The position numbers and the translations under genes were made by a program. The notes under the pieces are model-generated. The model ran no database searches. It worked only from the letters and a program-made list of their open reading frames with translations, and was not told the origin of the DNA. Shown here in pieces: positions 11,064-63,915 of a stretch of DNA of 64,000 bases (position 1 is its first letter; each line of letters starts with the position of its first letter). The DNA comes from Mustelus asterias (Eukaryota). The stretch is from assembly GCF_964213995.1 (NCBI RefSeq), contig NC_135808.1, positions 7,440,001-7,504,000 on the forward strand, in the 5' to 3' direction.

Positions 11064-11402
11064 ATGGGAGGATGGATTTCACAGTTTACCAGTTCCCTCC
11101 CTTTATAACGGCAGCAGAGGGGGAGTCGGTGACACTGAACTGTACCGTGAAATTTGAAGCAAACCTACTCCTAATGGGAGAAACTTATTGGACACGGGGT
11201 AAACAGGATGGCTACAGATTGGACAAGAGCCCATTTTATAAAGATCGGCTGGAGAGATCAGACAGCAAATCATTTGCCAACAACAGAATACATATTCATA
11301 TCTCTGGGTTGACTGAGAAGGATTCAGATACATATTACTGTCATGTATCCTTAATGGGATCAGAAGTGAGGGATGGAAATGGTACCCATCTGGAAGTAAG
11401 AC
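11064..11402 (+). CDS. Gene A exon 2: single-exon VJ-type Ig V domain, NKp30/NCR3-like
   Basis: Acceptor TTTTTCCCAACAG, 339 nt, phase 1-1, donor C|GTGAGT. Motifs GESVTLNC, YW, ISGLTEKDSDTYYC and J-like DGNGTHLEVR all lie in one exon. No recombination signal seen. Confidence 0.93.
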
Positions 11403-26440: not shown

Positions 26441-26441
26441 A

Positions 26442-26780: not shown

Positions 26781-29171
26781 ATGCTACGGCGTTTCAAGTG
26801 CTCAGCTGAATGTTCCTTAAAAGTGGGTTCCCACCTCGCCCATCCTTTCTGGCTGTGAGTTACAGATTCCCACCATCCCCCGGGTGAAAAGGTTTTTCCT
26901 CAAATCCCCTCTAAATTTCCTACTCCTTACTTTAAATCTATGCCTCCTGGTTATTGATCGCTCTACTAAGGGGGAAGTTTTCCTTCTATCTACCTCAACT
27001 ATATCCTTCATAAGTTTGTACACCGCCATCAGGTCCTCCCTCGGCCTTCTCTGCCCTCAGCAGAACAACACCAGCCTAACCAGCCTCTCTTCATAACTGA
27101 CACAAGTCCAAGTTGTTAGTAGTGAGATAGAAGCCTTAGACTGGGGATGTTTCTACTGGAAGAGCAGAGGCTGAAGTCAGATTTCATTGAGATGTATCAA
27201 ATTATGAGACATGTTAGAGAGTATGGGTATGACCTTGTTACCTCGGCACAGAGGTCATTGATCAACTGGCATTGAGATAAATTGATGACTAGAGGGGACA
27301 GGAGGAAAGATCTCCTCACCCAAACGGTTGCGTGGGTGGGGAGTGTGGTGCTGGGTCGGGTTGTGGAAGCTGGAACGCATTGCCTGAAAGAGTTGCAGAG
27401 GTGGGAACTGTCAAATTATTCGAAAGGTGCCTGGATTTTTTTTGTGGGACATGGGCGTAGCTGGCTGGCCACCATTAATTGCCCATCCCTAGTTTCCCGA
27501 GGGCAGTTGAGAGTCAACGATATTGCTATGGCTCTGGAGTTACATGCAGGCCGGACCAGGTAAGAACGGCAGACTTCCTTCCCTTAAGGACATTAGTGAA
27601 CCAGATGGTGCTTTCAGACAATCTACAATGGTTTCAAGGTCATCAGTAGATTCTTAATTCTAGATATATTTTTACTGAATTCAAATTCCACCACCTGCCG
27701 CAGCGGGATTCGAACCCAAGTTCCCAGGGCATGAACTGAGTTTCTGGATTAATAGCCCAGCGATAATACCACTCGGCCAACCGAAGTGCCGTAATCTGCA
27801 GCGCTACAGAGCAAATGTTGTCAAGTGGGATGAGGCTCTGTGGCTCGTCTTTCGGCCCCTGCAGACACTGCGGGCCAAGTGGCCTCCTTGTATGCCGTAA
27901 ACCTTCTATGAGTCTACATAGACTATTTATTAACAACCCAAGGCTCCTTCAAAAGTATTTGGAAAACCGGCGACCTCTGTATCTAGGACAGGGCAACAGC
28001 CTCCAGGGAGCAGTACGTTTCATTTCAAGCCACACGCCATTCTAATCCGGTCCTTTTTTAACGGTGGTGGGGTCAAATCCGGAACTTCCCTTATTAGCAT
28101 CACTGCAGGTGTACGGACGCTCGATGAACTACAGCGGTTGAAGAACAGGGCAAGCCATCACCTCCTAAAGGGCAATTAGACGTGGGCAATAAGTGCTGGC
28201 CTAGCCAGAGAGGCTCACAATCTATGAAAAAATACGAACAGTAGTTAGAAAGTTGTTATCCAAAACTATTATTTCCCGTCTCAAAATGACATAATTAGAC
28301 TCAATGCTATTCTGGTTTTCACGTGGCAGGAGGAGCTAGCCTGGTTCTCCGTTAATCAAATACCAATATATCGGGGCAATTGCTATAGGACGCAACATAA
28401 GTAGCAAAACCAGGTGAAAGATCATTTGCATGCATTCAACTGTCGTCGCTGATAAAGTGGGATTTATTTAACCCAAGGTTAATACCGTGTACATGAAATT
28501 GTTCTATAAAGTAGACATCTCTTTAGATTGAAACATGCGTCAATCACAAAAGAAAAACAAACAAATGCAAATGGCGCTAAATAAATAACCTTTAAAAAAA
28601 GGTTTGCTTCAATATTTCTCGCATATGCGGTTGAATTTACGTGCGATGGGATGTTGGCGGAGTTAATGAGGAATCCTGTCTACAGGTTCTGTTGAAGGCA
28701 TGTTTTCCATCAACAGCTTAGGTGCAGAATGGATCTTTGATCGAGTTGTTTTTTCTTTGTTGACTCACTGAGCTCCTAACACCCACCGGCAATGTGGTTT
28801 TCCGTCCACATACATAGAAGAGCTCAAGTTATTGCTCATATTGTCATTGTCGAACATCAAACACACACAATGTATTTCATTTAAATAAATAAGGGCACAA
28901 TTCGCATTGTAGCTTCCACGCCCTCACCCTCACCCTCCAGTCTACTTTTTCAATTCCTATATAAACGGCACGTTGAGAGAGGAATTAATTTCCATTCTGA
29001 GCACTCCTGAGGTCGGGCCCTTTCACTTTGGATCGAACAATAACAGGAGCTCTGTGCCTCCAACCAGACAAGGCAGAAACTGTTCCATTCCCACCCATTT
29101 ATTCTACTGAGACTATTCATGTGGTGTGAATGCACCACATTCTACAGATCATCAGCGTGTGTGCAGTGAAG

Positions 29172-29228
29172 ATGCGATTCGTGCACTAATTGCTGTCATC
29201 CGACTGACTTTCTTCGCCCTATGCACTG
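29172..29228 (+). pseudogene. Pseudogene B' leader exon
   Basis: Mirror of 51123-51180 but 57 nt long: a 1-nt deletion gives ATG CGA TTC GTG CAC TAA. The donor G|GTGAGT is retained. Confidence 0.85.
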
Positions 29229-31780: not shown

Positions 31781-31884
31781 CTTAGGGAAGGAAGTTTATT
31801 GCTTTCTTTATTGCTTTCTTGGTAGTTCTTGATAAACTTAGGGAAGGAAGTGTATCATCCTTACCTGGTCTGGCCTACATGCAT

Positions 31885-35116: not shown

Positions 35117-35292
35117 AGGAATTTGAAGTTGAAATCAGATACCCTCTGCTATTTCCGAGTTTCCTTCCTTTATAAACGCCAGTCGGCGTTTGGACAAGAA
35201 ACAGTCTGCTGTCAAATCTAGGGCTTGACAGAGGGGCGTTTATTACTGTGACAAAGCCGGAAAGTGACAAAACAGCACCGTGACAGTAAAAT
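35117..35292 (+). pseudogene. Pseudogene B' truncated-Ig exon
   Basis: Mirror of 48176-48370 with the same large internal deletion plus extra 1-, 10- and 8-nt deletions. Donor weakened to GTGATT. Confidence 0.82.
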
Positions 35293-35827: not shown

Positions 35828-35936
35828 GCCTTGTTAATGAAACAGAGAGGCATAACACCCATTTTTCTGGGCGTCCTGTTGGTAATGGCTGTGTTCATCG
35901 TATTTTTGACAGTTCGCGTGGTGCGGAGGAAATGAG
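35828..35936 (+). pseudogene. Pseudogene B' transmembrane exon
   Basis: Mirror of 45338-45448 (GITPIFLGVLLVMAVFIVFLTVRVVRRK*). A 2-nt deletion in the AG run, a TGA, and the donor GT changed to AT. Confidence 0.85.
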
Positions 35937-35954
35937 ATTTGTGGTTTCGGTATC

Positions 35955-37157: not shown

Positions 37158-37346
37158 TCACGGGAACTGGGGTGTGCAAGCTCTGGTCGCCGAGGTTTGT
37201 GGGGGATTGCTGATGCTCAGTGGGTTTATTGAGGCATATTCCACGCGATCTTCGTTCCTGTTTTGTCTGTCCGCCCTTCTCCCTTGTTGCAGATTCAACC
37301 GCGTGTACACACACCCCTCCTCAACAACATGACTCCGGGGAAACAC
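37158..37346 (-). CDS. Gene B last exon: cytoplasmic tail with two tyrosine motifs (CVYTRL, VEYASI)
   Basis: Acceptor TTTTAACCCCTTTAG, phase 0 matching the preceding exon. VFPRSHVVEEGCVYTRLNLQQGRRADRQNRNEDRVEYASINPLS...QFP*. Confidence 0.8.
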   Translation of the reverse strand: MFPRSHVVEEGCVYTRLNLQQGRRADRQNRNEDRVEYASINPLSISNPPQTSATRACTPQFP

Positions 37347-39173: not shown

Positions 39174-39202
39174 TTGTGCCGTTGCCTTTACGCCGCTGGA
39201 AT
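39174..39202 (-). CDS. Gene B exon 4: cytoplasmic micro-exon (DSSGVKATAQ)
   Basis: Acceptor TTCTGTTATATTCTTACTATCACAG, 29 nt, phase 1-0, donor CAA|GTAAGG. Exactly bridges the phases of the transmembrane and last exons. Confidence 0.75.
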
Positions 39203-45212: not shown

Positions 45213-45337
45213 CTTTAAACATAATCATTTGGACATGTTACCAAATGAATACTCGCAGGCTCAGAAACACTTCCATTCGGCCTGTATAATAGGGTACTAT
45301 TTGGTTCGGTATGCTTAAATATAACGAAACTACAAAC

Positions 45338-45448
45338 CTTTTTTTCCCCGCACCACTCGAACTGTCAAAAATACGATGAACACAGCCATTACCGACAGGA
45401 TGCTCAGAACAATAGGTGTTATGCCTCTCTCTGTTTCATTCACGAGGC
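45338..45448 (-). CDS. Gene B exon 3: stalk and uncharged transmembrane helix (CLVNETERGITPIVLSILSVMAVFIVFLTVRVVRGKK)
   Basis: Acceptor TTTATCCTGTTTATGGCAG, 111 nt, phase 1-1, open. About 20 hydrophobic residues then a basic stop-transfer segment; donor AAG|GTTTGT. Confidence 0.85.
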
Positions 45449-46680: not shown

Positions 46681-47551
46681 CTATTGTACTGTAACAGGCA
46701 CCGTTAACACAGGGGCACATGGGCGGGCAAAAATACTCATCTGTAAAGTGCTCCGGTGGTTTCTACGCCCATGGGCGTTGAAAGTAAGAATAATTGTCGT
46801 GTGTAGTGTGGGCCTATTTTGTTATTGTCCATTTCACATTCCCGCGCAACATTGCAAGTCCAATCGCTGTGCTTAGGAATTTTAATTCATCCTGTTTCAA
46901 TAAGAGTAATGTCTACTTGCCAGCATTGGAAATTGTGGGAAGTAACTCAAAGGCCGTCCGACATAGAAAGAGCGTTGGTGATTAAACAATATTGTCAGAG
47001 AAATTAATAAACAGATCTTGCATATATTGCTGTAGGGCTTAAGAGCTGAGTAATGTGTGACGGCAGAATGAGAAAAGATTCGGCGGAACACACTTAGCTC
47101 CAGAAAATTAAAAATAGAACGAAAGAGTTCTTGCTACTGGAAGGCAGAAGTGTCAAAGGGTGCAGGTGGTATGGAGGGTCAGGACAAGCGGTGTACTAGC
47201 ACTGCTGTAAAAACGAGAACAGTGACGACAGAAAGTAACGATAAAACTCCGGATAAGAACGGGGACGATATCATAACACCTTCAGAGTGGGGTGGGTGAA
47301 TGTGCATGGAGGAGGTTGTGCAAATATAATTCATTTTCGAGAATTATTGAGGAAGAAATCGAGGTACGCCAAGTAGAAGAGAAAGAATCAGAGGGAAATG
47401 GAGAAATGAGATTCTCCTGCTCAAAGACAGCACTGGGGCGAAAGGCCATGTCAGCAGCAGGTCCAGTTTGGAATCCATTGCTATGGATCAGGATCAGAAA
47501 GTGTAACGGCAAACTGAATGGTCCAAACCAGGTGACGCGTTCCCATAGCTG

Positions 47552-47858: not shown

Positions 47859-48175
47859 ATATTGTATGCTGGCGTCAGGTTAAAAGGAGAGTTGTGTTTT
47901 CAAGAAAGTTAAGCGGAGGAGGGCAAGGGGAGTGTGTTTTTTTTCTAATTCAATCATTTGTCGCTATTAATGCCTCTGCCATAGAAATCTTTCTTCACTC
48001 ATTTTCCAAAGCGACTAAAAGTCTTGAGTTTCACTGGATTTTCCATATATTCCGGTACAATGTTACCCACCCTTTTGCAGACTCCAGGCTCAGTAGAGCA
48101 TTTTCATCCGTTTTGAGAAATTATGTTTACTTGAATCATGCACATTATTCATCATTATTTTAAATGACTACTCAC

Positions 48176-48370
48176 ATTTAACCGTCACAGTGCTGTTTTG
48201 TCTCTTTTCGGTTTTGTCACAGTAATAGACGCCTGAGTCGCCCTCTGTCAAGCCATAGATTTTACAGCAGACTGTTTCTTGTCCAAACGCCGACTGGCCT
48301 CCTGCTGCGTTTATAAAGGGAGAAAACTCAAAAATAGCAGAGGGAATCTGATCTTTAACTTTAAATTCCT
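48176..48370 (-). CDS. Gene B exon 2: internally deleted Ig V-like domain (EEFKVKDQIPSAIFEFSPFINAAGGQSAFGQETVCCKIYGLTEGDSGVYYCDKTEKRQNSTVTVK)
   Basis: Open frame, phase 1-1 from a TAG acceptor (195 nt) or an alternative AAG acceptor at 48352 (177 nt); donor T|GTGAGT. Both ends align to the gene A V exon (YQFPPFITAAEGES; ISGLTEKDSDTYYC). The acceptor is only moderate. Confidence 0.72.
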
Positions 48371-50527
48371 CTAACTTTGCAACGTAGAGTAGCCGACTGC
48401 GTGATGTAGGGAATAAGGAATCTGTTAGTCTCCATTCACAATGTTATTAAGCATTAGTCAATTAGTGATCTATAATATTTATGCGCAGATGCATCAGTCA
48501 CGTGCTACCTTTATAAAGCTGGATTTACTGTGGACCACATGTATCCAAGTTCAAGACGGCGGGCGCAGAAACCCACACATTTTGCATCATGAGTCTGTTG
48601 CTTTTCACAATTTAGTTGACCGAAGAAGTTCACTCTTATCTTTTCTACTGGCGAAATTCTTCAGGAAGAGAAACTTTAGAGCAATCCTTCAAATTATCCT
48701 ATTTTGTTGCCAAAACGGAACAATTAATTTGACTTGGGAATTCTCAATGCATCGTTCTCAAAATGCTGTAATTATTTGCTCAACATGTCTGGTGAGAAGG
48801 CTATCATGTAATGCTGCAACCCGGAAGGATGCCATTCGGCCCATCGCGTCTATGACAGCTGTTTGAAGTAATTATCCAATTTGGGCCCTTCCATTCTCTT
48901 CCTCCATAGACCAGGTCCGATGCACGAATTTATGGTGTTTCTATTCGAAAGGTGCCATTGAATCTATTTTCAAGCATTGAAATTCCATTTGATGATGGCC
49001 CATTGATGAAAACGAAATTCCCCCTAATTTCTCTGTTAAAGGCCCTCATGATCTTTAAACCTCTACTTAACCTTCCCTCATCGTTCTCTGATTTGAGAAG
49101 AGTAATTCAGATCCCTGGTCATTCCACAGTTGCAGTCCCTCGTCCCATGGCAGCAGCACCTTCTCAGGGACAAATACGGCACTAAATGCTTCCCCTGGAC
49201 ACCCCAACAATGAATAAAATAAAAGTCTAAAAGGTTTAATCGGAGTCCCAATTTAAGTGCCACGCCCCTACTCGGAAGCCAAATAACATTTGAAAGACAT
49301 CAAACACCTTTTCATCTATAAGCGGCTTTCTCAAGGTAACTATTAAAGATTACTTATTTATTAGTTACAAGTAAGGCTTACATTAACACTGTAGTGAAGT
49401 TACTGTGAAATTCCCCTAGTTGCCACGCTCCGGTGCCTGCTCGCGGCACTGCACATAACCAGCACGTCTTTGAGGCTGTGGGAAGAAACCGGAGGAAACC
49501 CACGCAGACACAAAGAGAACGTGAAAACTCCGCACACACAATGGCCCAAACCGGGAATCGAACCTAGGTCCTCTAGCGCTGTAAGTCAGCAGTGCTAATC
49601 ACTGTGCCACCGTGTCACCCAGGTTAACCAACCCTTCTGCACACTAGCCGAAACTGAAATGGCCCCGATCTGGCTAGCTTAAATATAGAACTGCTTAAAT
49701 CAAAATAAGTTCCAGATGGATAAACGTGTATAATTAGCATAGACCCTGACTGATGTGACAGTTTTGTACTTTCTACGGCTTTTCCTTCTTCCTTCAAGCA
49801 AACACACTGTACTAATCCATGCTTGGAGTCAGTAAGATGCCAGTTATCAATTATCTTCCCATCTCTCTTCCCGAGAGTTATGCAATGAGCGGCGTTTTAC
49901 TTTTGAAAAATTCCTCATCCGCGTAAGCAAGTGAGATTTGCTTTATTTATTTTCAAGATGAAACAGCAAATACTGCAACAACATTTCTGAATGATAAATA
50001 TTTTCTAATCACAGTCACACACACACGCACAAGAACACACACACAAACGCATAGTTACGCACAAATACACACACACATATAGGATGCCGAGGTCAAAATA
50101 CTGAACACCCCCCTAACAGCTCTGTAAGTGTACCGACATCTCATGGACTGCAGCGGTTCATGAATGAAGCTCATCACCACCTTCTCAAGGGCAATTAGGG
50201 ATGCACAATAGATGGTAGCCTAGACAACGACGCCCACATTCCATGAGAGAATAAAAAACAGATAAGCCACGTAACAAATATACATGTAGGCCAGACCAGG
50301 TAAGGATGACAAACTTCCTTCCCTAAAGACATTTCTGTTGGGTTTTAAAAACAATGAGTTTTAATAGCAATCGATTCCTAGTGATCATTAGATCTTTTAT
50401 TCCAGATTTCACCACCTGCTTTGGTGGGATTCGAAGTGATGTCTCCAGAACATTACCCTGGGTCTCTGGATTACTAGCTTACTGACAATACCCACTGTAC
50501 CACTGCCTTCCCGCCAGAATTAATCAA

Positions 50528-50691
50528 GTTAAAGTCCAACACGTTTATTTGGAATCACGAGTTTTCCGAGATGAGTCACCCGAGGATGGAGCAGAGTTCC
50601 GAAAGCTCGTGATTCCAAATAAACCTGTTGGATTTTAACCTGGTGTATTGAGACTTCTTACTGTGCCACCCCAACGCCAGCATCTTCACAT
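50528..50691. mobile_element. Miniature Penelope-like terminus with a 13-bp target-site duplication
   Basis: CAGAATTAATCAA at 50515-50527 and 50692-50704; a single copy (empty site) in arm 1 near 29654-29666. Confidence 0.8.
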
Positions 50692-51122
50692 CAGAATTAA
50701 TCAACGCTGCATATTGCTACGGAGGATTTACTTTTCAAACGTACCGCGTTGACAAATTGTTACCGCTGGAAATGGCATCAACTGGAATCCGGCTGAATTG
50801 ACGTCCTCACTAATTATAGTCGCTTATTTTATGAAGGCTCGGCTTTCAATATGTTTTTCTCCCGGCTCAGAGAGGTTTCCTTTTCGAACAATATTATCTT
50901 TAATGGTAAGTCGGAAGATGAAGCAACTCTCAGAAGTGATGGAATCGCATATTGTTATGCTCGAATTTTACATTCAATCGATTGAGGATAAATGTAAAAT
51001 TTCTCAGAGAGTGGCATATCACTTTAACGGACTGATAATTCCCGAATTGCCAAAGGCGGCCCATTGAAACTTCCGACGATATTCACTGCATTGTATAATA
51101 GCTCGGAAAAATATGTACTCAC

Positions 51123-51180
51123 CAGTGCATAGGGCGAAGAAAATCAGTCGGATGACAGCAATTCGCTGCATGAATCGCAT
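51123..51180 (-). CDS. Gene B exon 1: signal peptide MRFMQRIAVIRLIFFALCT (in-frame upstream ATG at 51186)
   Basis: 58 nt, phase-1 donor G|GTGAGT. Aligns without gaps to the gene A leader (I..I.LI.F...T). Confidence 0.82.
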
Positions 51181-54100
51181 CTTCATTGCACACACGCTGA
51201 TGATCTGTAGGATGTGGTGCATTCACGCCAGATGAACAGTCTCAGTGGAATAAATGGGCGGGAATGGAACAAGTTGAGGTCCGTCTGGTCGGAGGCACAG
51301 AGCTCCTGTTATTGAGCGATACCAAGTGAAAGGGCCCGACCTCAGGAGTCTCAGAATAGAAATTAATTCCTCTCTCCACGTGCCGTTTACTTAGGAAATG
51401 AAAAAATAGTCTGGAGGGTGGGGGAGTTGAAGCTACAATGCGAGTGGTGCCCTTATCTATTTACAATGAAATACATTGTGCATTTTTGATGTTCCACAAT
51501 GACAATATGAGCAATAACTTGAGCTGTTCCATGTACGTGGACGGAAAACCACATTGCGGGTGGGTGTTAGGAGCTCAGTGAGTCAACAAAGAAAACCAAC
51601 TCGATCAAAGGTCCATTCTGCACCTAAGCTGTTAATGGAAAACATGCCTTTAATAGAACGTGTGGACAAGAGACCTCATCAAACCCCCCAACATCCAAAA
51701 GCACGTAAATTCAACCGCATATGTGAGAACTATTGAAGCAAAGCTTTATTTTTCGGTTATTTATTTTGCGCCGCCACATTTGTTTTTTTTATATTGACGC
51801 ATGTTTCAAACTTAAGAGATATCTATTTTATAGAACAATTTCATGTACACAATATTAACTTTTGGTTAAATAAATCCCACTTTATCAACGACATATTTAA
51901 ATGCATGCAAATGACCTGTCACTTCCCTCGCTTTGCAACTAATATTGCGTCCTAGAGCAATTGCCCCACTATATTGTTATTTGATTCACGGAGAACCATG
52001 CTAGTTACCCCCTGCCATGTGAAAACCAGAATAGCATTGAATCTAATTATGTCATTTGGAGACATAAATAATCATAATAATACTTTTGGATAATAACCTT
52101 CTAACTAGTATTATTATTCACTTATAGATTGTGAGCCTGTCTGGTTAGACCAACATTTACTGCCCACACCTAATTGCTCTTTAGGAGTGGTGGTTTGCCC
52201 CGTTCTTCAACCGCTGCAGTTCAACTCGAGTCAGTGCACCTGCAGTGATGCTAATAAGGGAAATCATAGACTTGAACCAGCTACTGTAAAAAAAAGACCA
52301 GATTAGTATGTCGTGTGGCTTGAAATGAAATGTACAATGTTACTGCTCCCTGGAGTCTGTTGCCCGGTCCTAGATGCGGCAGTCCTAGAGGTTGTCAGTT
52401 TGCCAAGTACGTTTGAAGGAGCCGTGGTGAGTGTTGTTAATAGATAGTGTATATGGAATCGTAGAAAATTTATGGCATAAAAATAAGCCACTTGGCCGGC
52501 AGTATCTACACCGGCCGAAAGACGAGCCACAGATCTTAATAACACTTGACAACATTTGATCTATAGCCCTGTAGGTTACAGTACTTAGGGTGCACATCCA
52601 AAGGGAGGCAATGGCCTAATCGCTAGACTATTAATCCAAAAACTCAGCCAGTGTCCTGGGAACCTGTGTTAGAATCCCGCCAGGGCAGATGGAGGATTTT
52701 GAATTCAGTAAAAGATATCTGGAATTAAGAATCTACTGATGACCATGAACCCATTGTAGATTGTCGAAAATACCCATCTGGCTCACTAATGCCCTTAAGG
52801 GAAGGAAATCTGCCTTCCGTACCTGGTCTGGCCTACATGTAACTCCAGAGCCACAGCAATGTGGTTGACTCCCAACTTCCTTCTGGCAACTAGGGATTGG
52901 CAATAAATGGCGGCCAGCCAGCGAGGCCCATGTCCCACAAATGAATGAAAAATATCCAGACACCTTTTAAATGATTTGACGGGTCCTGCCTCTACGACCC
53001 TTTGAGGTAAGGCGTTCATATGGGTGAAAGGAATTTTCCTCATATCCGCTCTCGACATCACTTCAACTCGTTGATCTCTCATGCCAGTCCTAGCAGCAGG
53101 ATGCAGCAAAGGTGGTGACATAGTTGTATACATTCGGGAGAGAGTTACCCTGGGAGTCCTCAACATTGACTCTGGACCCCATGAAGTCTCAGGATATTTA
53201 GACAATCAAGGGCAATCACAGATTGTTCCACCAGAGCAAGCGGAGAGGGAGTGATTCGAGTGAGAAGAGCTGAAGGTAAGAGACTTTGATATTTACATTG
53301 CATTTTGTTGGAGTTTTTTTCTCGAGTGAAACAGGAAACTGGAAATAGGCCGCAGAGAGGCCTGGGAAGGTTTTTGTTCTGTTTCTTTTTAAAGGACTTA
53401 CCTTCGAGGTTTCCACCTCATTGTGGCACCGCAGCAAGCGGAGGGGGTGCAATTCGAGTGAGAAGAGCTGAATGTACAAGACTTTGATTTTTACATTACT
53501 TTTCGTTGGAGTTTTTTTTCCTAGTGCAACAGGAAACAGGAAACCGGAAGTAGGCCGCAGAGAGGCCTGGGAAGGTTTTTGCCCAATAAATTTGAACGGG
53601 GGGCGGGGGGAACCCGAGACACTAAACCTAAGAGTCTCCCACCCTCCCCCCTCCTCTAACCTAAAAAAAAGACCCGGAGTGAGAGCATTTTTTTTCACTC
53701 TTTCATTTCCGCAAGTTATCTCGTGGGGATGTCAGGGAAGGCAGTGCAATGTTCCTCCTGCAGAATGTTTGAGGTGAGGGATGCCGTCAGTGTCCCTGCT
53801 GATTTCACCTGTGGGAAGTGCACCCATCTACAGCTCCTCAAAAACTGCGTTAGGGAACTGGAGCGGGAGCTGGATGAACTTTGGATCATTCGGGAGGCAG
53901 AGATGGCCATAGATAGAAGCTTCGGGGATGTAGTTACTCTGAAGAATGAAGATAGATGGGTAACGGTGAGAGGGGCTGGGAAGAAGCAGCCAGTACAAGG
54001 ATCCCCTGTGGTCGTTCCCCTCAGCAACAAGTATACCGCTTTGGATACTGCTGAGGGGGACGACCTACCAGTGCTGGGCGGCAGTGACCGGATCTCCAGC

Positions 54101-56579
54101 ACTGAGTCCGTCCCTGTAGCTCAGAAGGGAAGTGGGGGGGGGAGAAGGAGAGCAATAGTTATTGGAGACTCGATAGTTAGAGGGATAGATAGAAGGTTCT
54201 GTGGCAGTGAAAGGGACTCACGGATGGTATGTTGCCTCCCGGGTGCCAAGGTCCGTGACATCTTGGACCGTGTTTTCAGGATCCTTAAGTGGGAGGGGGA
54301 ACAGTCACAAGTCGTGGTACACATCGGTACCAACAACATAGGTAGGGGAAGGGATGGGGATTTAAACAAGAATTTAGGGAGCTAGGGTGGAAGCTGAGAG
54401 CCAAGACAAACCATGTTGTCATCTCTGGTCTGTTGCCACTGCCACGTGCTAGCGAGTTGAGGAACAGGGAGAGGGTGCAGATAAACATGTGGCTGCAGGG
54501 ATGGTGTAGGAGGGAGGGTTTCAGTTTTGTGGATAATTGGAGCTCATTCTGGGGAAGGTAGGACCTGTACAAACATGACGCGTTGCACCTGAACCAGAGG
54601 GGCACCAACATCATGGGAGGGAAATTTGCTTCGGCTCTTTGGGGGGGTTTAAACTAATTTGTCAGGGGGATGGGAAAACGAGCTCAAGTCCAGAAGCCAG
54701 TGTTGAGTGTATTGAGGTACTGAGGAGGGAATCAAGGGGTTGCAGCAGTGTACCGACAGACAGGAAAGTGGGTTAAAGAGTGTCTACTTCAATGCAAGGA
54801 GCATCCGGAATAAGCTAGGTGAACTTGGAGCATGGATTGGTACTTGGGACTACGATGTTGTGGCCATTACAGAGACATAGTTAGAACAGGGGCAGGAATG
54901 GTTGTTGGAAGTTCCAGGGTATAGATGTTTCAGTAAGAGTAGGGAGCGTGGTAAAAGAGGTGGAGGAGTAGCACTGTTAATCAAGGATAGTTCAGCGGCT
55001 GCAGAAAGGCAGTTCATAGGGGATCTGCCTACTGAGGTAATATGGGCTGCAGTTAGAAATAGGAAAGGAGCGGTCACGTTGTTAGGAGTTTTCTTTCGGC
55101 ACCCAAATAGTAATAGAGATGTGGAGGAAGAAATTGCAAAGCAGATTATGGATGGGTGTGGAGGTCACAGGGTAGTTGTCATGGGTGACTTTAACTTTCC
55201 AAATATTGATTGAACCCATTATAGGTCGAATAGTTCGGATGGGGCAGTTTTTGTACAGTTTGTGCAGGAGGGTTTCCTGGCACAATATGTGAATAAGCCG
55301 ACAAGAGGTGGGGCTACTTTGGATTTGGTACTGGGTAATGAACTGGGCCAAGTGTTGGATTTGTTTGTGGGAGAGCACTTTGGAGATAGTGACCACAATT
55401 TGGTGTCTTTCACTGTTGCATTGGAGAGGGATAGGGCCATACGGCAGGGCAAGGTTTATAATTGGGGAGGGGTAATTATGATGCGATTAGGCAGGAATTA
55501 GGGAGCATAGGATGGGAACAGAAACTGTCAGGTAAAGGCACAAATGAAAAGTGGAACTTGTTCAAGGAACAAATACTGCATGTCTTTGATAGGTATGTCT
55601 CTGTCCGCAGGGAGGGAATGGACGAGTGAGGGAACCATGGTTCACAAAAGAAGTGGAATGTCTTGTCAAGAGGAAAATGGAAGCGTATGAGAAAACAAGT
55701 TTCAATTGGGTCGCTTGAGGGTTAAAAGGTAGCAAGGAATTAGCTAAAAAAAAGGGGTTAGGAGAGCGAGGAGGAGACATGAGAAGTCCTTGGCGGGCCA
55801 GATCAAGGAAAACCCCAAGGCTTTTTACTCTTATGTGAGAAGTAAAAGAATGACCAGGGTGAGGTTAGGGCCGGTCAAGGACAGTAGTGGGAACTTGTGC
55901 ATCGACTCAGAAGAGATAGGAGAGGCAATGAATGAATACTTTTCTTCAGTGTTCACCAAGGAGAGTGGCCATGTTTTTGAGGATGAGAGTGTGATACAGG
56001 CTGATAGGCTGGAGGAGGTAGATGTTCTGAGGGAAGATGTATTAGCAATTTTGAAAAATCTGAGCGTCGATAAGTCCCCTGGGCCAGATGGGATATATCC
56101 TAGGATTCTTTGGGAGGCAAGGGATGAGATTGCAGAGCCTTTGGCTTTGATCTTTGGGTCCTCACTGTCCACGGGGATAGTGCCAGAGGACTGGAGAGTG
56201 GCGAATGTTGTTCCTCTGTTCAAGAAAGGAAATAGGAATGACCCCGGTAATTATAGGCTGGTTAGTCTTACTTCGGTGGTCGGTACGTTAATGGAAAAGT
56301 TCCTGAGAGACAGGATTTATGACCATTTGGAAAGATGCAGCTTTTTCCGGGATAGCCAACATGGATTCGTGAAGGATATGTCTGGCCTCACAAATGTGAT
56401 TGAATTCTTTGAGGAGGTAACTAGGTGTGTAGATGAAGATAGAGCAGTTGATGTCGTATACATGGATTTTAGTAAGGCGTTTGATAAGGTTCCCCATGGT
56501 GGGCTCACGAAGAAAGTAAGGAGGTGTGGGATAGAGGGAGATTTGGCTGATTGGATAAGTAACTGACTATCTCATAGAA

Positions 56580-58045
56580 AGAAGTCTCACAACACCAGGT
56601 TAAAGTCCAACAGGTTTATTTGGTAGCAAATACCATAAGCTTTCGGAGCACTGTTCCTTCGTCAGATGGAGTAGAAATGTGCTCTCAAACAGTGCAAACA
56701 GACACAAAATCAAGATGCAGAATACTGATTAGAATGCGAATCCCTACAGCCAGCCAGGTCTTAAAGGTACAGACAATGTGGGTGGAGGGAGCATTAAACA
56801 CAGGTTAAAGAGATGTGTATTGAGTCCAGACAGAACAGCTAGTGAGATTCTGCAAGCCCAGGAGGCAAGCTGTGGGGGTTACTGATAATGTGACATAAAT
56901 GCAACATCCTGGTTTAGGCCGTCCTCATGTGTGTGGAACTTGGCTATCAGTTTCTGCTCAGCGACTCTGCACTGTCGTGTGTTGTGAAGGCCGCCTTGGA
57001 GAACGCTTACCTGAAGATCCAAGGCTGAATGCCCGTGACTGCTGAAGTGCTCCCCCACAGGAAGAGAACAGTGTTGCCTGGTGATTGTCGAGCGGTGTTC
57101 ATTCATCTGTTGTTGTAGCGTCTGCATGGTTTCCCCAATGTACCATGCCTCGGGACATCCTTTCCTGCAGCATATCAGGTAGACAATGTTGGCCGAGTTA
57201 CAAGAGTAGGTACCGTGTACCTGGTAGATGGTGTTCTCATGTGAGATGATGGCATCCGTGTCGCTGACCACCACACTACACAACCCTGCCACAGCAACCT
57301 CTGCAAGACGTGCCGGATCATCGACACGGATGCCATCATCTCACGTGCGAACACCATCTACCAGGTACACGGTACCTACTCTTGCAACTCGGCGAACATT
57401 GTCTACCTGATACGCTGCAGGAAAGGATGTCCCGAGGCATGGTACATTGGGAAACCATGCAGACGCTACGACAACGGATGAATGAACACCGCTCGACAAT
57501 CACCAGGCAAGACTGTTCTCTTCCTGTGGGGGAGCACTTCAGCAGTCACGGGCATTCAGCCTTGGATCTTCAGGTAAGCGTTCTCCAAGGCGGCCTTCAC
57601 AACACACGACAGCGCAGAGTCGCTGAGCAGAAACTGATAGCCAAGTTCCACACACATGAGGGCGGCCTAAACTGGGATGTTGGATTTATGTCACATTATC
57701 AGTAACCCCCACAGCTTGCCTCCTCGGCTTGCAGAATCTCACTAGCTGTTCTGTCTGGAGACAATACACATCTCTTTAACCTATGTTTAATGCTCCCTCC
57801 ACCCACATTGTCTGTACCTTTAACACCTGGCTGGCTGTAGGGATTCGCATTCTAATCAGTATTCTGCAACTTGATTTTGTGTCTGTTTGCACTGTTTGAG
57901 AGCACATTTCCACTCCATCTGACGAAGGAGCAGTGCTCCGAAAGCTTATGGTATTTGCTACCAAATAAACCTGTTGGACTTTAACCTGGTGTTGTAAGAC
58001 TTCTTACTGTGTTCACCCCTGTCCAGCGCCGGCATCTCCACATCA
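56580..58045. mobile_element. Penelope-like element: inverted pair of GIY-YIG endonuclease and terminal segments
   Basis: NIVYLICCRKGCPEAWYIGETMQTL...EH on the minus strand (56879-57292) mirrored at about 57320-57705 (+). 12-bp duplication TATCTCATAGAA (56568-56579 and 58046-58057). Confidence 0.9.
57919..57943 (+). ncRNA. Minimal hammerhead-ribozyme-like core in the Penelope terminus
   Basis: CTGACGA-AGGAGCAGTGCTCC-GAAA (conserved boxes around a stem II hairpin), with a mirror copy at about 56641-56665. Stems I and III were not verified. Confidence 0.55.
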
Positions 58046-59102
58046 TATCTCATAGAAGACAGAGGGTGGTGGTGGAATGAAAATTTTCAGACTGGAGACC
58101 AGTTACCAGCGGTGTACCACAGGGATCAGTGTTGGATCCTCTGCTATTTGTGATTTTTATCAATGACTTGGAGGAGGGGGCTGAAGGGTGGGTCAGTAAA
58201 TTTGCTGATGACACCAAGATTGCTGGAGTAGTGGATGAGCTGGAGGGCTGTTGTCGGCAGCAAAGGGACATTGATAGGCTGCAAAGCTGGGCCGAAAAAT
58301 GGCAGATGGAATTTAACCCTGATAAGTGCGAGGTGATTCATTTTGGTAGGACAAATTTGAATGCGGATTACAGGGTCAACGGCAGGGTTCTGAGGAATGT
58401 GGAGGAACAGAGAGATGTTGGGGTTCATATCCACAGATCTCTGAAGGTTGCCACTCAAGTGGATAGAGCCGTGAAGAAGGCCTATAGTGTGTTAGCGTTT
58501 ATTAACAGGGTGTTTGAGTTTAAGAGCCGTGGGGTTATGCTGCAACTGTACAGGACCTTGGTTAGACCACATTTGGAATATTGTGTGCAGTTCTGGTCAC
58601 CTCACTATAAGAAGGATGTGGAAGCATTGGAAAGAGTGCAAATGAGATTTACCAGGATGCTGCCTGGTTTGGAGGGTAGGTCTTGTGAGGAAAGGTTGAG
58701 GGAGCTAGGGCTTTTCTCTTTAGAGCGGAGGAGTATGAGAGGCGACTTAATAGAGGTTTGTAAGATGATGAGGGGGATAGATAGAGTGGACATTCAGAGA
58801 CTATTTCCTCTGGTGGATGGAGCTATTACTAGGGGGCATAACTATAAGGTTCACGGTGGGAGATACAGGAAGGATGTCCGAGGAAGGTTCTTTACTCAGA
58901 GAGTGGTTGGGGTGTAGAATAGACTGCCTGCTTTGATAGTGGAGTCGGACACTTTAGGAACTTTCAAGTGGTAATTGGATAGGCACATGGAGCACACCAG
59001 AATGATAGGGAGTGGGATAGCTTGATCTTGGTTTCAGACAAAGCTCGGCACAACATCGAGGGCTGAAGGGCATGTACTGTGCTGTCCTGTTCTATGTTCT
59101 AT

Positions 59103-60750
59103 GAAACCTCCTGCTGATTACCATATACCGCACCAGCCCACCCCGTCAGCGATGAATCAGTACTCCTTCATGTCAAACACAATTAGAGAAAGCACTGAGG
59201 GTCGCAAGGGGCAGAATGTGCTCTGGGTGGGGGACTTCAATATCCATCACTAAGAGTGGCTCAGCAGCAGTACTACAGACTGAGCTGGCCAAGCCCAGAG
59301 AGGTATAACTGCTTGACTGGATCTGCGTCAGGTGGCAATGGAACCAAGAAGAGAGGAAACATACAAATAAATAACCAGAGTAGGAGCATCAACCTGCGTG
59401 CTGCAGATGCACTTGTCCCTGACAGTATCAGTAGGAGTGTTCACAGTTCTTGTGGAAACAAATTCCCATTTTCGCATTGTGAATACCCTCCATCATGTTG
59501 TGTGGGACTCACGCCATGATATGTTTTTTCTATTCATTTGTGGGACATTGGCGTCGCTGGCTTGCCAGCATTTATTGCTGCCCATCCAGAGTTCTCCTTT
59601 CAGGGCATTTCGGATTCAACCGCATTGCTCTGGCCACATGTAGGCCAGACCAGAAAAGGGATTTCCTTCCCGAAAGGACAATAGTGAACCAGATGGATTT
59701 GTCCAACAACCGGCAATGGTTTCATGGTCATCAGTGGATTCTTAATTCCAGATACTTTTTTTAATTGAATTCAAATTCCAGCATCTCCCATAGCGGTATT
59801 TGAACCTGGATCCCCAGCACATTAGCTGAGTTTCTGGATTAACAGTCTAGTGAAAATACCAATAGGCCATCGCCTCCCTTTATCGGCTAGATTTCAAACA
59901 GTTCTAACAACTCAACACTGGGCATTGATGAGGCGTTGTGCCCCCATCAACAGCAGCAGAATTGTACTCAGCCACAGTCTGGAGCCTCATGGCCTGCCAT
60001 TTCCCCACTCTACCATTACCACCAAACAAGGGGATCAACCTTGGTTTAACGAAGGTTACAGGAGAGCATGCCATGAGCAACAGCAGGCATACCTAAACAT
60101 GAGGTATGAACATGGTGAAGTTACAGCACAGGATTATTTGCCTGCCTAATAGGAAGAGCAGCAAGTAATAGTTAGCTTCCTCAAGTATTTCCATCCTGAA
60201 TGACGGGGCAGCCCAGCACATCAGTGCAAAAGGTAAGACTGAAGATTTGCAACAATATCAGATAGCAGGGCCCATGAATGATTCATCTCCTCCAGACATC
60301 CTCACCATTACAGATGCCAATCTTCAGCCAATTCGATTTATTCCTTCTGCCACCAAGAAACGGCTAAAGGCACTCTGTACTGCAAAGACTATGGACCCTG
60401 ATCATATTCCGGCAATAATCCTGAACAATTGTGCTCCAGAACTTGCCCTGTCCCAAGCCAAGCTGTTCCTGTATGGATTTAACAGTGGCATCTAGCCCAA
60501 AGATGTGCGGGTTAGGTAAGTTGGCTATGCTAAATTGACCTTTCGTGTCAGGGGGATTAGCAGGGTAAATATGTGGTGTTATGGGGATCTGGCCTGGGTG
60601 AGATTGTTGTTGGTGCAGGCTTGATGGGCCGAATGGCCTCCTTCTGTACTGCAGGGATTCTATGATTCCATGATCTACCCGGCATGTTGGAAATTTGCTC
60701 AGGTATGTCCTGTACACAAAAAGCAGAGCAGATCTAACCCAGTCACTCAT
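59103..60750 (+). mobile_element. Old degenerate LINE with nested SINEs (partly the mirror of 25465-26780)
   Basis: KQGDQPWFNEGYRRA and MDPDHIPAIILNNCAPELA. Confidence 0.7.
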
Positions 60751-61306
60751 GGATACCCAGATTTGAGCGACAAAATCTGCCCTGAATTTTACCTGTTAAC
60801 ATGATGGATTGCATCTTCATTGTGAAGCCGGGACTTTACCTCCACAATCACAGTGCCACGGTCACTCTATTCACTCTGTCATCTGGAGCCAATTGGCAAT
60901 GCGTTGTAGAGTTTTGCTCTCTTATTCTTTCCCTCGCTATGTGCTGCTGTCCCAGACTGGCAGAGATACCCTACATGACTCCACCAGCTCGGTCAGGAGC
61001 AGTGCTATTGAATCACTTTTGATGGTGGACACTGAAGGTCCCCATCCAAAGTAAATTCCGTGCCGTTGCTACCAACAGTGTTTCTACCAAGTGGTACTCA
61101 ACATAGAGGGGTACTGAATCAGCAGGAGACTGAGGGTGATTGGTAGTAGTCTGAAGGAGGGTTCCTTGCCATGTTTAATCTTGTACCAGGTTTCTACATT
61201 CCTATGTTTTCTTTGTACCAGGAGACCTCAGGGGTTCTGGTGTCAATGTTGAAGACTATTGGGGCAACACATTACCTCTACCTGCCGCTACTTCTGCTGG
61301 ATCTGT

Positions 61307-62985
61307 CAAAGAACAAAGAACAAAGAACAATACAGCATAGGAACAGGCCCTTCGGCCCTCCAAGCCCGCGCCGCTCCCTGGTCCAAACTAGACCATTCTT
61401 TCGTATCCCTCCATTCCCACTCCGTTCATGTGGCTATCTAGATAAGTCTTAAACGTTCCCAGTGTGTCCCCCTCCACCAGCTTGCCCGACAGCGCATTCT
61501 AGGTCCCCATCACCCTCTGCGTAAAATACGTCCTTCTGATATCCGTGTTAAACCTCCCACCCCCCCCCCCCCCCCCCCGCCCCCCCGCCTCACCTTGAAC
61601 ATATGACCCCTCGTGAACGTCACCACCGACCTGGGAAAAAGCTTCCCACCGTTCACCCTATCTATGCCTTTCATAATTTTATACACCTCTATTAGGTCAC
61701 CCCTCATCCTCCGTCTTTCCAGTGAGAACAACCCCTGTTTACCCAATCTCTCCTCATAACTAAGCCCTTCCATACCAGGCAACATTCTGGTAAACCTCCT
61801 CTGTACTCTCTCTAAAGCCTCCATGTCCTTCCGGTAGTGTGGTGACCAGAACTGGGTGCAGAATTCCAAATGCGGCCGAACCAACGTTCTATACAACTGC
61901 AACATCAGACCCCAACTTTTATACACTATGCCCCGTCCTATAAAGGCAAGCATGCCATATGCCTTATTCACTACCTTCTCCAGCCGTGACGTCACCTTCA
62001 AGGATCTGTGGACTTGCACACCCAGGTCCCTCTGCATATCTACACCCTTTATGGTTCTGCCATTTATCGTATAGCTCCCCCGTATGTTAGTTTTACCAAA
62101 ATGCATCACTTCGCATTTATCTGGATCGAACTCCATCTGCCATTTCTTTGCCCAAATTTCCAGCCTATCTATATCCTTCTGTAGCCTCTGACAATGTTCC
62201 TCACTATCTGCAAGTCCAGCCATTTTCATGTCGTCCGCAAACTTACTGATCACCCCAGTTACACCTTCTTCCAGATTGTTTATATAAATCACAAACAGCA
62301 GAGGTCCCAATACAGGGCCCTACGGAACACCACTAGTCACAGGCCTCCAGCCAGAAAGAGACCCTTCCACTACCACCCTCTGTCTTCTGTGACCAAGCCA
62401 GTTCTCCACCCATCTAGCCACCTCCCCCTTTATCCCATGTGATCCAACCTACCATGAGGGACTTTATCAAACGCTTTATTAAAGTCCATATAGACGACAT
62501 CCACGGCCCTTCCCTCGTCAACCATTCTAGTCACTTCTTCAAAAAGCTCCACCAGGTTAGTGAGGCATGACCTCCCTCTCACAAAAGCATGCTGACTATC
62601 GATAATGAGTTTATTCCTTTCTAAATGTGCATACATCCTATTTCTAAGAATCCTCTCCAACAACTTCCCTACCACGGACGTCACGCTCACCGGCCTATAA
62701 TTTCCCGGGTTATCCTTCCTACCCTTCTTAAATAACGGGACCACATTAGCTATCCTCCAATCCTCTGGGACCTCACCTATGTCCAGTGACGAGATGAAGA
62801 TTTGCGTCAGAGGCCCAGCGATTTCATCTCTCATCTCCCTGAGCAGCCTTGGATAGATTCCATCAGGCCCTGGGGATTTGTCAGTCTTTATATTCCCTAA
62901 AAAACCTAACACTTCCTCCCTTGTAATGGAGATTTTCTCTAACGGGTCAACACTCCCCACCGAGGCACTCCCAGTCAACACATCC
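61307..62985 (-). mobile_element. Young 5'-truncated CR1 LINE, same subfamily as 39862-42980 (arm-2-specific)
   Basis: Near-identical ORF2 peptide, a small internal deletion near 62440 and a (TTCTTTG)n tail. Confidence 0.93.
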
Positions 62986-63619
62986 TTCAGTTGGGACAGG
63001 ACATACCTAGGGACGTACCTCGGGACGTTGATGATGGTGTTTCGGCCACTGGCTGTCAGGTATGATTCCGTGAGATTGACTATGTCAGGCTGTTCCTTTA
63101 CTGTTCTGTGGGAAAGCTCTCCCAATTTCCGCACAAGGCCCCAGATCGAGTACAGAAGATTTCAGCAGCTACTATTTCAGCGGGCACGTAAACGTCAACC
63201 AAATTGTGGGCTGGTTCAACCAGTTACATACGGCAGATGTCCTCTTCTAAAGAACGTTTGTGAACCGGATGGAGTCTTAGAGGGCCCAATAATCTTGCAG
63301 CCACCATCACTGAGACTAACTGCTGATTCCAGACTTATTAATGCATGAAATTTAAATTCCAACAACAGATGTATTGGAATTTGAGCTCGCATCACCACCA
63401 CGCCACTCTTCTCCAAAACTCCACACTATGAATTTCGTAAGAACGGCAGTGTGGACATTAAATTTGAGGACATAATTAAAGCAGAGTCTGTTTCATACAA
63501 ACTTTTGTTTTAGTGCCTTTTCTGTTTCCAATCGTCTTGTTCAATACAATCCATAGGCCAATCAGATTCATCTCAATGGTACAGGAACTCTCCACAATGA
63601 TAGAACCGCAAGACTCCCT

Positions 63620-63915
63620 ATAGTGCAGAAAGAGGATATTCAGCACATCTGCACTGACGCCCTCTCCCTAAGAGAGCATCTCACTTCCGCCCATAACCCA
63701 ACACATTTACCATGGCTAACCCACCTAACCTACACATCTCTATACACTAAAGGACAAGTTAGCAATGCCAATCCACCTCACCTGCAAATCTTTCGACTGT
63801 GGGCGAAACCCACGCAGACACAGGAGAACGTGCAAACACCACACAGACAGTTACCCAAGGCCGGAATTGAACCGGGTCCCTTGTGCTGTGAAGCAGCACT
63901 GCCACCATGCCACCC
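63620..63915 (-). mobile_element. tRNA-derived SINE at the outer end of arm 2
   Basis: Its body mirrors the headless SINE at 20688-20890. Confidence 0.8.

What the first reader, a model, noticed from the sequence alone, without database searches (positions are those of the whole stretch)
48176..48370. Gene B ectodomain is a half Ig domain that has kept its reading frame
Seen: the exon joins the A/A' strands (IFEFSPFINAAGGQSA, matching VYQFPPFITAAEGESV in gene A) directly to the E-F-G region (CKIYGLTEGDSGVYYC...TVTVK). About 40 codons are missing, including the B-strand Cys and C-strand Trp. A CC pair sits in the E-strand region and two N-glycosylation sequons (NST, NET) follow. The same deletion is in the arm-1 copy, so it predates the duplication, yet only this copy stayed open. 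Inference: possible selection for a minimal-ectodomain inhibitory protein, adaptor-like or with a re-wired disulfide. The alternative is a pseudogene that escaped frameshifts by chance.
Basis: partly seen in the sequence, partly recalled or inferred. Interest (0 to 1): 0.85.

Follow-up and report, generated by a model that had tools for sequence, protein, structure and literature searches.

The report
Shark receptor with half Ig domain
A shark immune-receptor gene of the NKp30 family has lost the middle of its only antibody-like domain, yet all five coding pieces are still intact while a neighbouring duplicate has decayed, so the shortened protein was probably kept in use, though no RNA evidence could be obtained.

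Summary
Exon 48370..48176 (minus strand) is open, 65 codons, phase 1-1. It matches gene A's V exon only at the A/A' strands and the E-F strands, with 141 nt (47 codons) missing between them. The same junction is in the arm-1 copy.

Context: the exon belongs to a coherent five-exon NKp30-like gene: leader 51186-51123, half-V, TM 45448-45338, a 29-nt exon 39202-39174, and an ITIM tail 37346-37158. All junctions are GT-AG and in frame. Arm 1 is a 5'-partial inverted duplicate. Its three exon copies carry 5 indels, 3 in-frame stops, a lost ATG and a lost donor; arm 2 carries none.

At the arms' intronic rates (K2P 0.16), intactness by chance is 0.16 for the half-V exon alone, 0.024 for the three arm exons and about 0.003 for all five. 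Exon divergence is lower than non-exon divergence, and pN/pS is about 0.43-0.55.

Past purifying selection on the truncated gene is therefore likely. The scan's index shows no look-alike elsewhere.

The parts
51123..51186 (-). Gene B exon 1: leader/signal peptide MKMRFMQRIAVIRLIFFALCT plus 1 nt, donor CTG|GTGAGT, phase 1
   Evidence: Found by the ATG/hydrophobic/donor scan. It aligns with gene A's leader candidate and with the arm-1 copy. Context GCAATGA and donor shown.
48176..48370 (-). Gene B exon 2: the half V exon (A/A' strands joined to E-F-G), 195 nt, phase 1-1, donor AAT|GTGAGT. Other in-frame acceptors would start the exon at 48352 or 48421. The acceptor with the best pyrimidine tract (exon start 48396) gives a stop after 8 codons.
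   Evidence: Pfam V-set scores only 13.8 bits (cut-off 26) over profile positions 76-101. PDB matches cover only residues 28-61.
45338..45448 (-). Gene B exon 3: stalk Cys (split codon T+GC), NET sequon, uncharged TM helix ITPIVLSILSVMAVFIVFLTV, RVVRGKK; acceptor cag|GC, donor AAG|GTTTGT, phase 1-1
39174..39202 (-). Gene B exon 4 (candidate): 29 nt, (D)SSGVKATAQ, phase 1 in and phase 0 out, acceptor tract 0.70 pyrimidine, donor CAA|GTAAGG
   Evidence: It rests on splice signals, frame fit and a weak likeness to the family's '..ATQ|V..'. There is no RNA support.
37158..37346 (-). Gene B exon 5: cytoplasmic tail VFPRSHVVEEGCVYTRL...RVEYASI...QFP plus stop; phase 0; one canonical ITIM (VEYASI) and one YxxL motif with Cys at -2
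   Evidence: tblastn against the catshark tail YAKVNIKEGKKTRTMNCDTRHVEYATI (P0013) gives E 0.002 within the window.
35117..35292 (+). Arm-1 copy of the half V exon: same junction, but deletions of 1, 10 and 8 nt and two stops in the arm-2 frame
29166..29228 (+). Arm-1 copy of the leader exon: first ATG changed to GTG, 1-nt deletion
35828..35936 (+). Arm-1 copy of the TM exon: 2-nt deletion, in-frame stop, donor GT lost (AG|AT)
47903..63821 (-). Arm 2 of the inverted duplication (a further block lies at 45321-45585). Its partner is arm 1, 20688-35600 plus 35690-35953 (+).
   Evidence: Self-BLAST and repeats. Outside the exons: p-distance 0.143, K2P 0.160, 66 gap events in 6619 aligned nt.
11064..11402 (+). 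Gene A V exon, the full-length comparator (NKp30-like VJ domain with GNGT in the G strand)
   Evidence: V-set E 7.8e-13; the four best PDB matches are NKp30 entries, E 3.4e-8 to 4.5e-8.

Best explanation
Gene B is an NKp30 (NCR3)-like paralogue in a shark receptor cluster. Its single V exon lost 141 nt (the B to D strands) in frame. That loss came before a roughly 15-kb inverted duplication that copied only the gene's 5' part (upstream region, leader, V, TM). The arm-2 gene kept the only tail and stayed intact. It most likely encodes, or encoded until recently, a type I membrane protein. After the signal peptide comes a non-Ig ectodomain of about 70 residues, with two N-glycan sequons and four cysteines (CC, the F-strand Cys and a stalk Cys). 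Then follow an uncharged TM helix and a tail of about 85 residues with YTRL and the ITIM VEYASI. What is shown: the anatomy, the in-frame five-exon structure, and the asymmetry with the decayed arm-1 copy. What is inferred: the protein cannot bind ligand through an Ig fold. It would act as a ligand-blind inhibitory chain, a disulfide-linked homodimer or a partner of full-length cluster members, recruiting SH2 phosphatases through its ITIM as known ITIM receptors do.
For: Five exons have canonical GT-AG sites and matching phases, about 195 codons in all. The tail is homologous to shark NKp30-like inhibitory tails (E 0.002). Arm 1 has 5 indels, 3 stops, a lost ATG and a lost donor in the three exon copies, and arm 2 has none; a sign test gives 2^-10. 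In a neutral simulation at the intronic rates, the three arm exons stay intact with probability 0.024 and exons 4-5 with 0.13, together about 0.003. Exon divergence is 32/348 against 0.143 outside the exons (p 0.0027). The V exon shows 16/176 (p 0.025), and 16/176 against 27/130 in the 150 nt just upstream (Fisher p 0.0045). For the V exon pS is 0.173, close to the two-lineage neutral value, and pN is 0.075, close to the one-lineage value; the ratio is 0.43. Gene A's TM exon also carries a stalk Cys.
Against: No protein resembling the exon was found: 8 generic Ig hits covering the F-strand region among 1.84 billion representatives, no candidate of 50-159 aa, and nothing in metagenome contigs. 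The half-V exon alone stays open by chance 16% of the time, and its pN/pS test gives p 0.09. The in-frame acceptors have weak to moderate pyrimidine tracts (0.35-0.55), while the best tract (0.75, exon start 48396) gives a stop. At least one replacement (CCT to TCT) lies on the arm-2 lineage, judged against gene A and the pseudo-V (alignment). The A/A' strands, which look conserved among the shark homologues printed, match gene A at only 8 of 16 residues here (my count). The J-like GxGT is QNST. Exon 4 is a model without homology support. AlphaFold2 gives pLDDT 41.6.
Confidence: 0.55

Rival explanations
1. Gene B is an unprocessed pseudogene. The V deletion killed it, and the arm-2 exons are open only by chance, or it died recently.
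For: Loss of the B-D strands removes the Ig fold's Cys and Trp. Such clusters evolve by birth and death, and this window already holds a pseudo-V (10216-10511) and the dead arm 1. No protein like it is in the searched collections. The acceptors are weak. V-exon openness alone has p 0.16.
Against: All five exons intact has a probability of about 0.003 under neutrality since the duplication. The 10-to-0 asymmetry of disabling changes, the lower exon divergence and pN/pS below 1 also argue against it. A recent death cannot be excluded, but it would still mean the truncated form was kept for a long time.
Confidence: 0.25
2. The gene is functional but the half-V exon is skipped or non-coding. Leader-to-TM splicing is frame-neutral because both junctions are phase 1. 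The product would be an almost ectodomain-less ITIM protein, and the exon a decaying relic.
For: The exon is 195 nt and phase 1-1, so skipping keeps the frame. Its acceptors are poor and the strongest nearby one is out of frame. The constraint signals specific to this exon are only marginal (p 0.025-0.09).
Against: A skipped exon would be neutral, yet it has no indel or stop against five in arm 1. Its divergence is lower than the adjacent intron's (Fisher p 0.0045). Its donor is a perfect GTGAGT.
Confidence: 0.1
3. The exon is not 'A/A' joined to E-F-G' but a contiguous C''-D-E-F-G half of a V exon whose 5' half was lost. A related variant: a longer 246-nt exon from the gene-A-like acceptor aacag|AT (exon start 48421) is the one used.
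For: tblastn aligns LDKSPFYKDRLERSDSKSFANNRIHIHISGL..YYC to FEFSPFINAAGGQS---AFGQETVCCKIYGL..YYC at E 0.003-0.04. The frame stays open from 48421, and its acceptor context equals gene A's.
Against: At the DNA level the 5' block matches the A/A' strands (31 of 39 nt, 0 of 2000 shuffles) and shares only an 8-mer with the C'' region. The stretch 48421-48371 lies in the most diverged part of the arm alignment (p about 0.21) and holds an 18-nt indel, as intron would.
Confidence: 0.1

Closest known systems
Shark NKp30 (NCR3)-like receptors with inhibitory tails, e.g. Mustelus asterias LOC144497821 (P0014) and Scyliorhinus canicula LOC119976539/LOC119976781 (P0012, P0013)
   Same: Leader / V / stalk-TM / tail exon plan. 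The tail carries two tyrosine motifs ending in VEYA[ST]I. The V-exon DNA descends from the same kind of exon as gene A. Gene A's V domain differs from P0014 at 4 of the 108 aligned residues by my count of the alignment. Its best solved relatives are four NKp30 entries.
   Different: 47 codons (B to D strands) are missing, with no Cys-Trp core. The J-like GNGT is QNST. The membrane-proximal motif has Cys at -2 instead of V/L/I. A stalk Cys is present, which the stalks of P0012-P0017 lack.
Human NKp30d/e/f isoforms
   Same: These are NKp30-family chains with a different, C-type Ig ectodomain instead of the V-type (PMC9231431, passage read).
   Different: They arise by alternative splicing of an intact gene. 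That they are shorter is recalled, not in the passage. Human NKp30 signals through a TM Arg and CD3zeta/FcRgamma. Here the shortening is a germline deletion, the TM is uncharged and the tail has an ITIM.
[quoted passage not shown]
   Same: [quoted passage not shown] It is the closest working analogy for a ligand-blind ITIM chain. That its ectodomain is short is recalled, not read.
   Different: No sequence relation was tested or is expected. SIT did not arise from an Ig receptor as far as I recall. Dimerisation of gene B's product is only inferred from its cysteines.
Unprocessed pseudogenes of birth-and-death immune receptor families
   Same: An internal deletion in the only ligand-binding exon. 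The sister copy (arm 1) is a clear example.
   Different: The arm-2 gene has no disabling change in any of its five exons.

Membership tests
V-set immunoglobulin domain (Pfam PF07686) | Scores above the Pfam gathering cut-off over most of the profile | tested here: not met
   13.8 bits against a cut-off of 26, profile positions 76-101 of 109 only. Gene A's exon scores 49 bits over positions 3-108.
V-set immunoglobulin domain (Pfam PF07686) | B-strand Cys, C-strand Trp and F-strand Cys core | tested here: not met
   Only the F-strand motif GDSGVYYC is present. No B-strand Cys or Trp is in frame.
NKp30 (NCR3)-like VJ receptors of cartilaginous fish | V exon descended from the family's V exon | tested here: met
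   Two DNA blocks match gene A's V exon (0 of 2000 and 16 of 2000 shuffles). Gene A's V matches shark NCR3-like proteins and NKp30 structures.
NKp30 (NCR3)-like VJ receptors of cartilaginous fish | Germline-joined J-like G-x-G-T motif in the G strand (motif recalled; it is seen in gene A and in P0001-P0003 and P0012-P0019 as GNGT) | tested here: not met
   Gene B reads RQNSTVTVK. Gene A reads GNGTHLEV.
NKp30 (NCR3)-like VJ receptors of cartilaginous fish | Leader, stalk-TM and tail exons joined in frame | tested here: met
   The sequence model is coherent. It is not verified by RNA.
ITIM-bearing inhibitory receptor | (S/I/V/L)xYxx(I/V/L) in a cytoplasmic tail continuous with the TM segment (consensus recalled) | tested here: met
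   VEYASI sits in exon 5, in frame through the 29-nt exon 4. The first motif, CVYTRL, is non-canonical at -2.
ITIM-bearing inhibitory receptor | Tyrosine phosphorylation and SHP-1/SHP-2/SHIP recruitment | not testable with these tools
   This needs biochemistry.
Transmembrane adaptor proteins (SIT-like) | Short ectodomain, disulfide-linked dimer, no ligand-binding domain | not testable with these tools
   The cysteines and sequons are present. Dimerisation and surface expression are unknown.
Unprocessed pseudogene | Frameshift, premature stop, or lost start or splice site | tested here: not met
   None is found in the five arm-2 exons. All of these types are present in arm 1.

The most novel reading that the evidence does not exclude
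The half V remnant is a working module, not a spacer. Through its unpaired cysteines (CC, F-strand Cys, stalk Cys) it would disulfide-link to full-length NKp30-like chains of the same cluster, such as gene A, which also has a stalk Cys and an activating-type charged TM helix. Alternatively, two half domains would complement each other into one Ig-like sandwich. Either way the product is a germline-encoded, ligand-blind inhibitory subunit that damps an activating receptor, kept by selection since before an old inverted duplication (K2P 0.16 between the arms).
Probability: 0.15. Interest if true: 0.7.

Novelty: new variant of a known kind. Interest (0 to 1): 0.45.

Why it matters
If the truncated gene is expressed, it shows one way an Ig-superfamily receptor can turn into a ligand-blind ITIM chain by a single in-frame exon deletion. 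It would show this in the oldest living jawed-vertebrate lineage, inside a cluster of paired activating and inhibitory NKp30-like genes. The window also contains its own neutral control: the tail-less arm-1 duplicate. That control makes the selection question testable from sequence alone once orthologous loci or RNA reads are available. If the gene is not expressed, this is an ordinary pseudogene of a birth-and-death family.

Tried and rejected
1. Contiguous C''-D-E-F-G reading of the exon. Protein alignments allow it (E 0.003-0.04). DNA favours A/A'. I kept it as a low-weight rival.

2. A 'C-C' strand' match at 34573-34632 with an arm-2 counterpart (E 0.4). By my reading of the frames it lies in LINE-like sequence shared by both arms. 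I took it for chance.

3. A relic B strand (SATLRCK, 48398-48375, in another frame) upstream of the exon. Its DNA similarity to V exons is not significant: 672 of 2000 and 1755 of 2000 shuffles reach the score.

4. My own error. From I first read exon 4 as 30 nt and concluded that the ITIM tail was out of frame (notes 1-2). Searches show 29 nt (CAA|GTAAGG), so the tail is in frame (note 3).

5. A homology search for further tail exons between 45338 and 37346. Only the last exon matched; the rest was noise.

6. Polarising substitutions with gene A. The four-way alignment is reliable only in the A/A' block, which is too few sites.

7. AlphaFold2 on the 65-residue exon alone gave pLDDT 41.6 and pTM 0.20. 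It was too poor for fold search, so none was run. No dimer prediction is offered by the tools.

8. Literature. Searches and passages showed no V-truncated NKp30-like gene in cartilaginous fish. The two key papers (Flajnik et al. 2012, PMC3709836; Ohta and Flajnik 2015, PMC4594805) are not held, so this is not a claim of absence from print. No supplements were opened.

9. The exons were never joined for a search, a fold or a cluster look-up.

Full report
**What is at the coordinates**

On the minus strand, 48370..48176 is an open 195-nt stretch ending in AAAT|GTGAGT. Read in phase 1 it gives (E)EFKVKDQIPSAIFEFSPFINAAGGQSAFGQETVCCKIYGLTEGDSGVYYCDKTEKRQNSTVTVK.

Against gene A's V exon (11064-11402, +) only two DNA blocks match:
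- 48328-48290 matches 11091-11129, the A/A' strands. Identity is 31 of 39 nt, and 0 of 2000 shuffles reach the score.
- 48260-48219 matches 11300-11341, the E-F strands. Identity is 30 of 42 nt, and 16 of 2000 shuffles reach the score.

The blocks are 170 nt apart in gene A and 29 nt apart here, so 141 nt (47 codons) are missing, in frame. These include the B-strand Cys and the C-strand Trp. The F-G part is also 18 nt shorter, and the family's GNGT reads QNST.

Pfam sees only a sub-threshold piece of V-set (13.8 bits, profile positions 76-101). PDB sequence matches cover only residues 28-61.

**Family and organism**

Gene A's V exon finds shark proteins named natural cytotoxicity triggering receptor 3 or left uncharacterised:
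- Scyliorhinus canicula, 69% identity.
- Mustelus asterias LOC144497821, which differs at 4 of the 108 aligned V residues by my count of the alignment.

Its four best solved relatives are NKp30 entries, E 3.4e-8 to 4.5e-8. Earlier notes of this scan describe many NKp30-like paired receptor genes in this genome. I took these notes as leads only.

**The duplication**

Self-comparison shows an inverted duplication. Arm 1 is 20688-35600 plus 35690-35953 (+). Arm 2 is 63821-47903 plus 45585-45321 (-). Outside the exons the arms differ by p 0.143 (K2P 0.160), with 66 gap events in 6619 aligned nt. This is far too diverged to be an assembly duplicate.

The 35-nt deletion junction is identical in both arms, so the deletion is older than the duplication.

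**Gene model**

I read the model exon by exon. The exons were never joined for a search or a fold.
- Leader, 51186-51123: MKMRFMQRIAVIRLIFFALCT, donor CTG|GTGAGT. It aligns with gene A's leader candidate.
- Half-V exon, 48370-48176.
- TM exon, 45448-45338: a split Cys codon, then LVNETERG, an uncharged helix and RVVRGKK; donor AAG|GTTTGT.
- Exon 4, 39202-39174: 29 nt, SSGVKATAQ, phase 1 in and phase 0 out.
- Tail exon, 37346-37158: VFPRSHVVEEGCVYTRL...RVEYASI...QFP and stop.

The tail aligns with the catshark tail YAKVNIKEGKKTRTMNCDTRHVEYATI at E 0.002. It occurs once, on the minus strand, in the spacer between the arms. Arm 1 is therefore a 5'-partial, tail-less duplicate.

I first misread exon 4 as 30 nt and thought the tail was out of frame. 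Searches corrected this.

**Is the open frame more than chance?**

The arm-1 exon copies carry the following changes; arm 2 carries none of these types:

| Arm-1 copy | Disabling changes |
|---|---|
| Leader | first ATG changed to GTG; 1-nt deletion |
| V | deletions of 1, 10 and 8 nt; two stops in the arm-2 frame |
| TM | 2-nt deletion; one stop; donor lost |

That is 10 disabling changes against 0.

I simulated neutral evolution at half the intronic K2P and half the intronic indel rate, using the observed gap lengths. The chance of staying intact is:

| Exons | Chance of staying intact |
|---|---|
| Leader | 0.40 |
| Half-V exon | 0.16 |
| TM exon | 0.36 |
| All three arm exons | 0.024 |
| Exon 4 | 0.59 |
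| Tail exon | 0.22 |
| All five exons | about 0.003 |

The last figure assumes that exons 4 and 5 had the same time at risk.

Exon divergence between the arms is 32/348, against 0.143 outside the exons (binomial p 0.0027). For the V exon it is 16/176 (p 0.025). Against the 150 nt just upstream (27/130) Fisher's test gives p 0.0045. Against the downstream flank (15/129) it gives p 0.57.

Results from the Nei-Gojobori method for counting synonymous and replacement changes:

| Exons | pS | pN | pN/pS | Test |
|---|---|---|---|---|
| Leader + V + TM | 0.148 | 0.081 | 0.55 | binomial p 0.05-0.11 |
| V | 0.173 | 0.075 | 0.43 | p 0.09 |
| TM | 0.201 | 0.087 | 0.43 | p 0.07 |

The four leader changes are all replacements. 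The pattern fits a neutral arm 1 and a constrained arm 2: pS is near the two-lineage neutral value and pN near the one-lineage value. The counts are small, local divergence varies between 0.06 and 0.22, and the tests are not independent.

**What speaks against a working half-Ig protein**

- No RNA evidence could be obtained. The run search listed 4 rows from one study, kind unknown, none on record as RNA.
- No similar protein was found. Among 1.84 billion representatives, the 8 hits with E up to 0.001 are multi-Ig proteins whose best stretches lie within query residues 37-88, the F-strand region.
- No candidate of 50-159 aa shares words with the exon. A 195-residue product would lie outside that search's length range.
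- Two metagenome scans found nothing.
- The in-frame acceptors (exon starts 48421, 48370, 48352) have pyrimidine tracts of 0.35, 0.55 and 0.35. The acceptor starting the exon at 48396 has 0.75 and gives a stop after 8 codons.
- The stretch upstream of 48370 is the most diverged part of the local alignment. This argues for an exon start at or after 48370.
- The single-sequence AlphaFold2 model is uninformative: pLDDT 41.6, with only an F-G hairpin.

**Verdict**

The truncated gene was most likely kept by purifying selection after its V exon was shortened. Its predicted product is a type I membrane protein with:
- a short, glycosylated, cysteine-bearing, non-Ig ectodomain;
- an uncharged TM helix;
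- an ITIM tail.

How it would be engaged without an Ig fold is inference. It could act as a dimer, or as a partner of full-length chains through the stalk Cys; gene A also has a stalk Cys.

Known parallels:
- Human NKp30d/e/f isoforms, which have a different, C-type Ig domain produced by splicing (PMC9231431, passage).
- SIT, a disulfide-linked homodimeric glycoprotein adaptor carrying an ITIM (PMC2193021, listing and start of abstract).

My searches and the passages I read showed no description of a V-truncated NKp30-like gene in cartilaginous fish. The two most relevant papers are not held. Supplements were not consulted.

Noticed in passing
window 10216-10511 (+): A second V-like exon lies about 850 nt upstream of gene A's V exon and is 79% identical to it. 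It has an in-frame stop (..LAGKD*DTYYC) and a frame change near 10428. It is a tandem pseudo-V exon.
   Followed up: partly
window 6640-7581 (+): Gene A's leader candidate (MDSILKINLIQLILFLPTT, 6640-6697) runs into a 306-nt tandem repeat of 3.0 copies (6662-7581). The 3' part of the leader and its donor may therefore be present three times.
   Followed up: no
window 48375-48398 (-): In a frame other than the open one, the DNA just upstream of the half exon reads (Q)SATLRCK. This looks like the missing B strand with its Cys. Arm 1 lacks 18 nt here. The DNA similarity to V exons is not significant.
   Followed up: yes
window 47179-47334 (-): A hydrophobic ORF (..VMISSPFLSGVLSLLSVVTVLVFTAVLVHRLS, then stop) lies between the half-V and TM exons, in a stretch of about 2.3 kb with no arm-1 counterpart. 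I took it for chance or repeat-derived sequence.
   Followed up: no
window 30873-31013, 41313-41432, 44059-44130, 56429-56518, 62445-62525: The N-terminus of the annotated Chiloscyllium plagiosum protein P0015 (..YVDLTKAFVKVPHGRL..) matches repeated sequence in this window. By recall it looks like a reverse-transcriptase motif. That public gene model may start in a retroelement.
   Followed up: no
window 12953-13095 (+): Gene A's stalk-TM exon reads (R)RIKKSNCLDPGTALISTLLRTIILPAIVLVILLLKTLASKLKWKCN. It has a stalk Cys, and Arg and Lys in the helix. Its V domain is nearly the same as that of the ITIM-tailed Mustelus protein P0014, which suggests a paired activating/inhibitory set.
   Followed up: partly
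window 56573-58011 and 40850-42462 / 61363-62988: There is a 563-nt inverted repeat, 97% complementary, with arms 313 nt apart. There is also a repeat pair about 1.6 kb long at 91-93%, shared by the spacer and arm 2. Both are younger than the arms and are probably transposable elements.
   Followed up: no
window 200-330 and 1130-1295, beside the N run 331-468: The minus strand here translates to Cys/Val-rich, low-complexity runs (my reading: a TG/CA-type simple repeat) on both sides of the only N run. The N run was left as it is.
   Followed up: no
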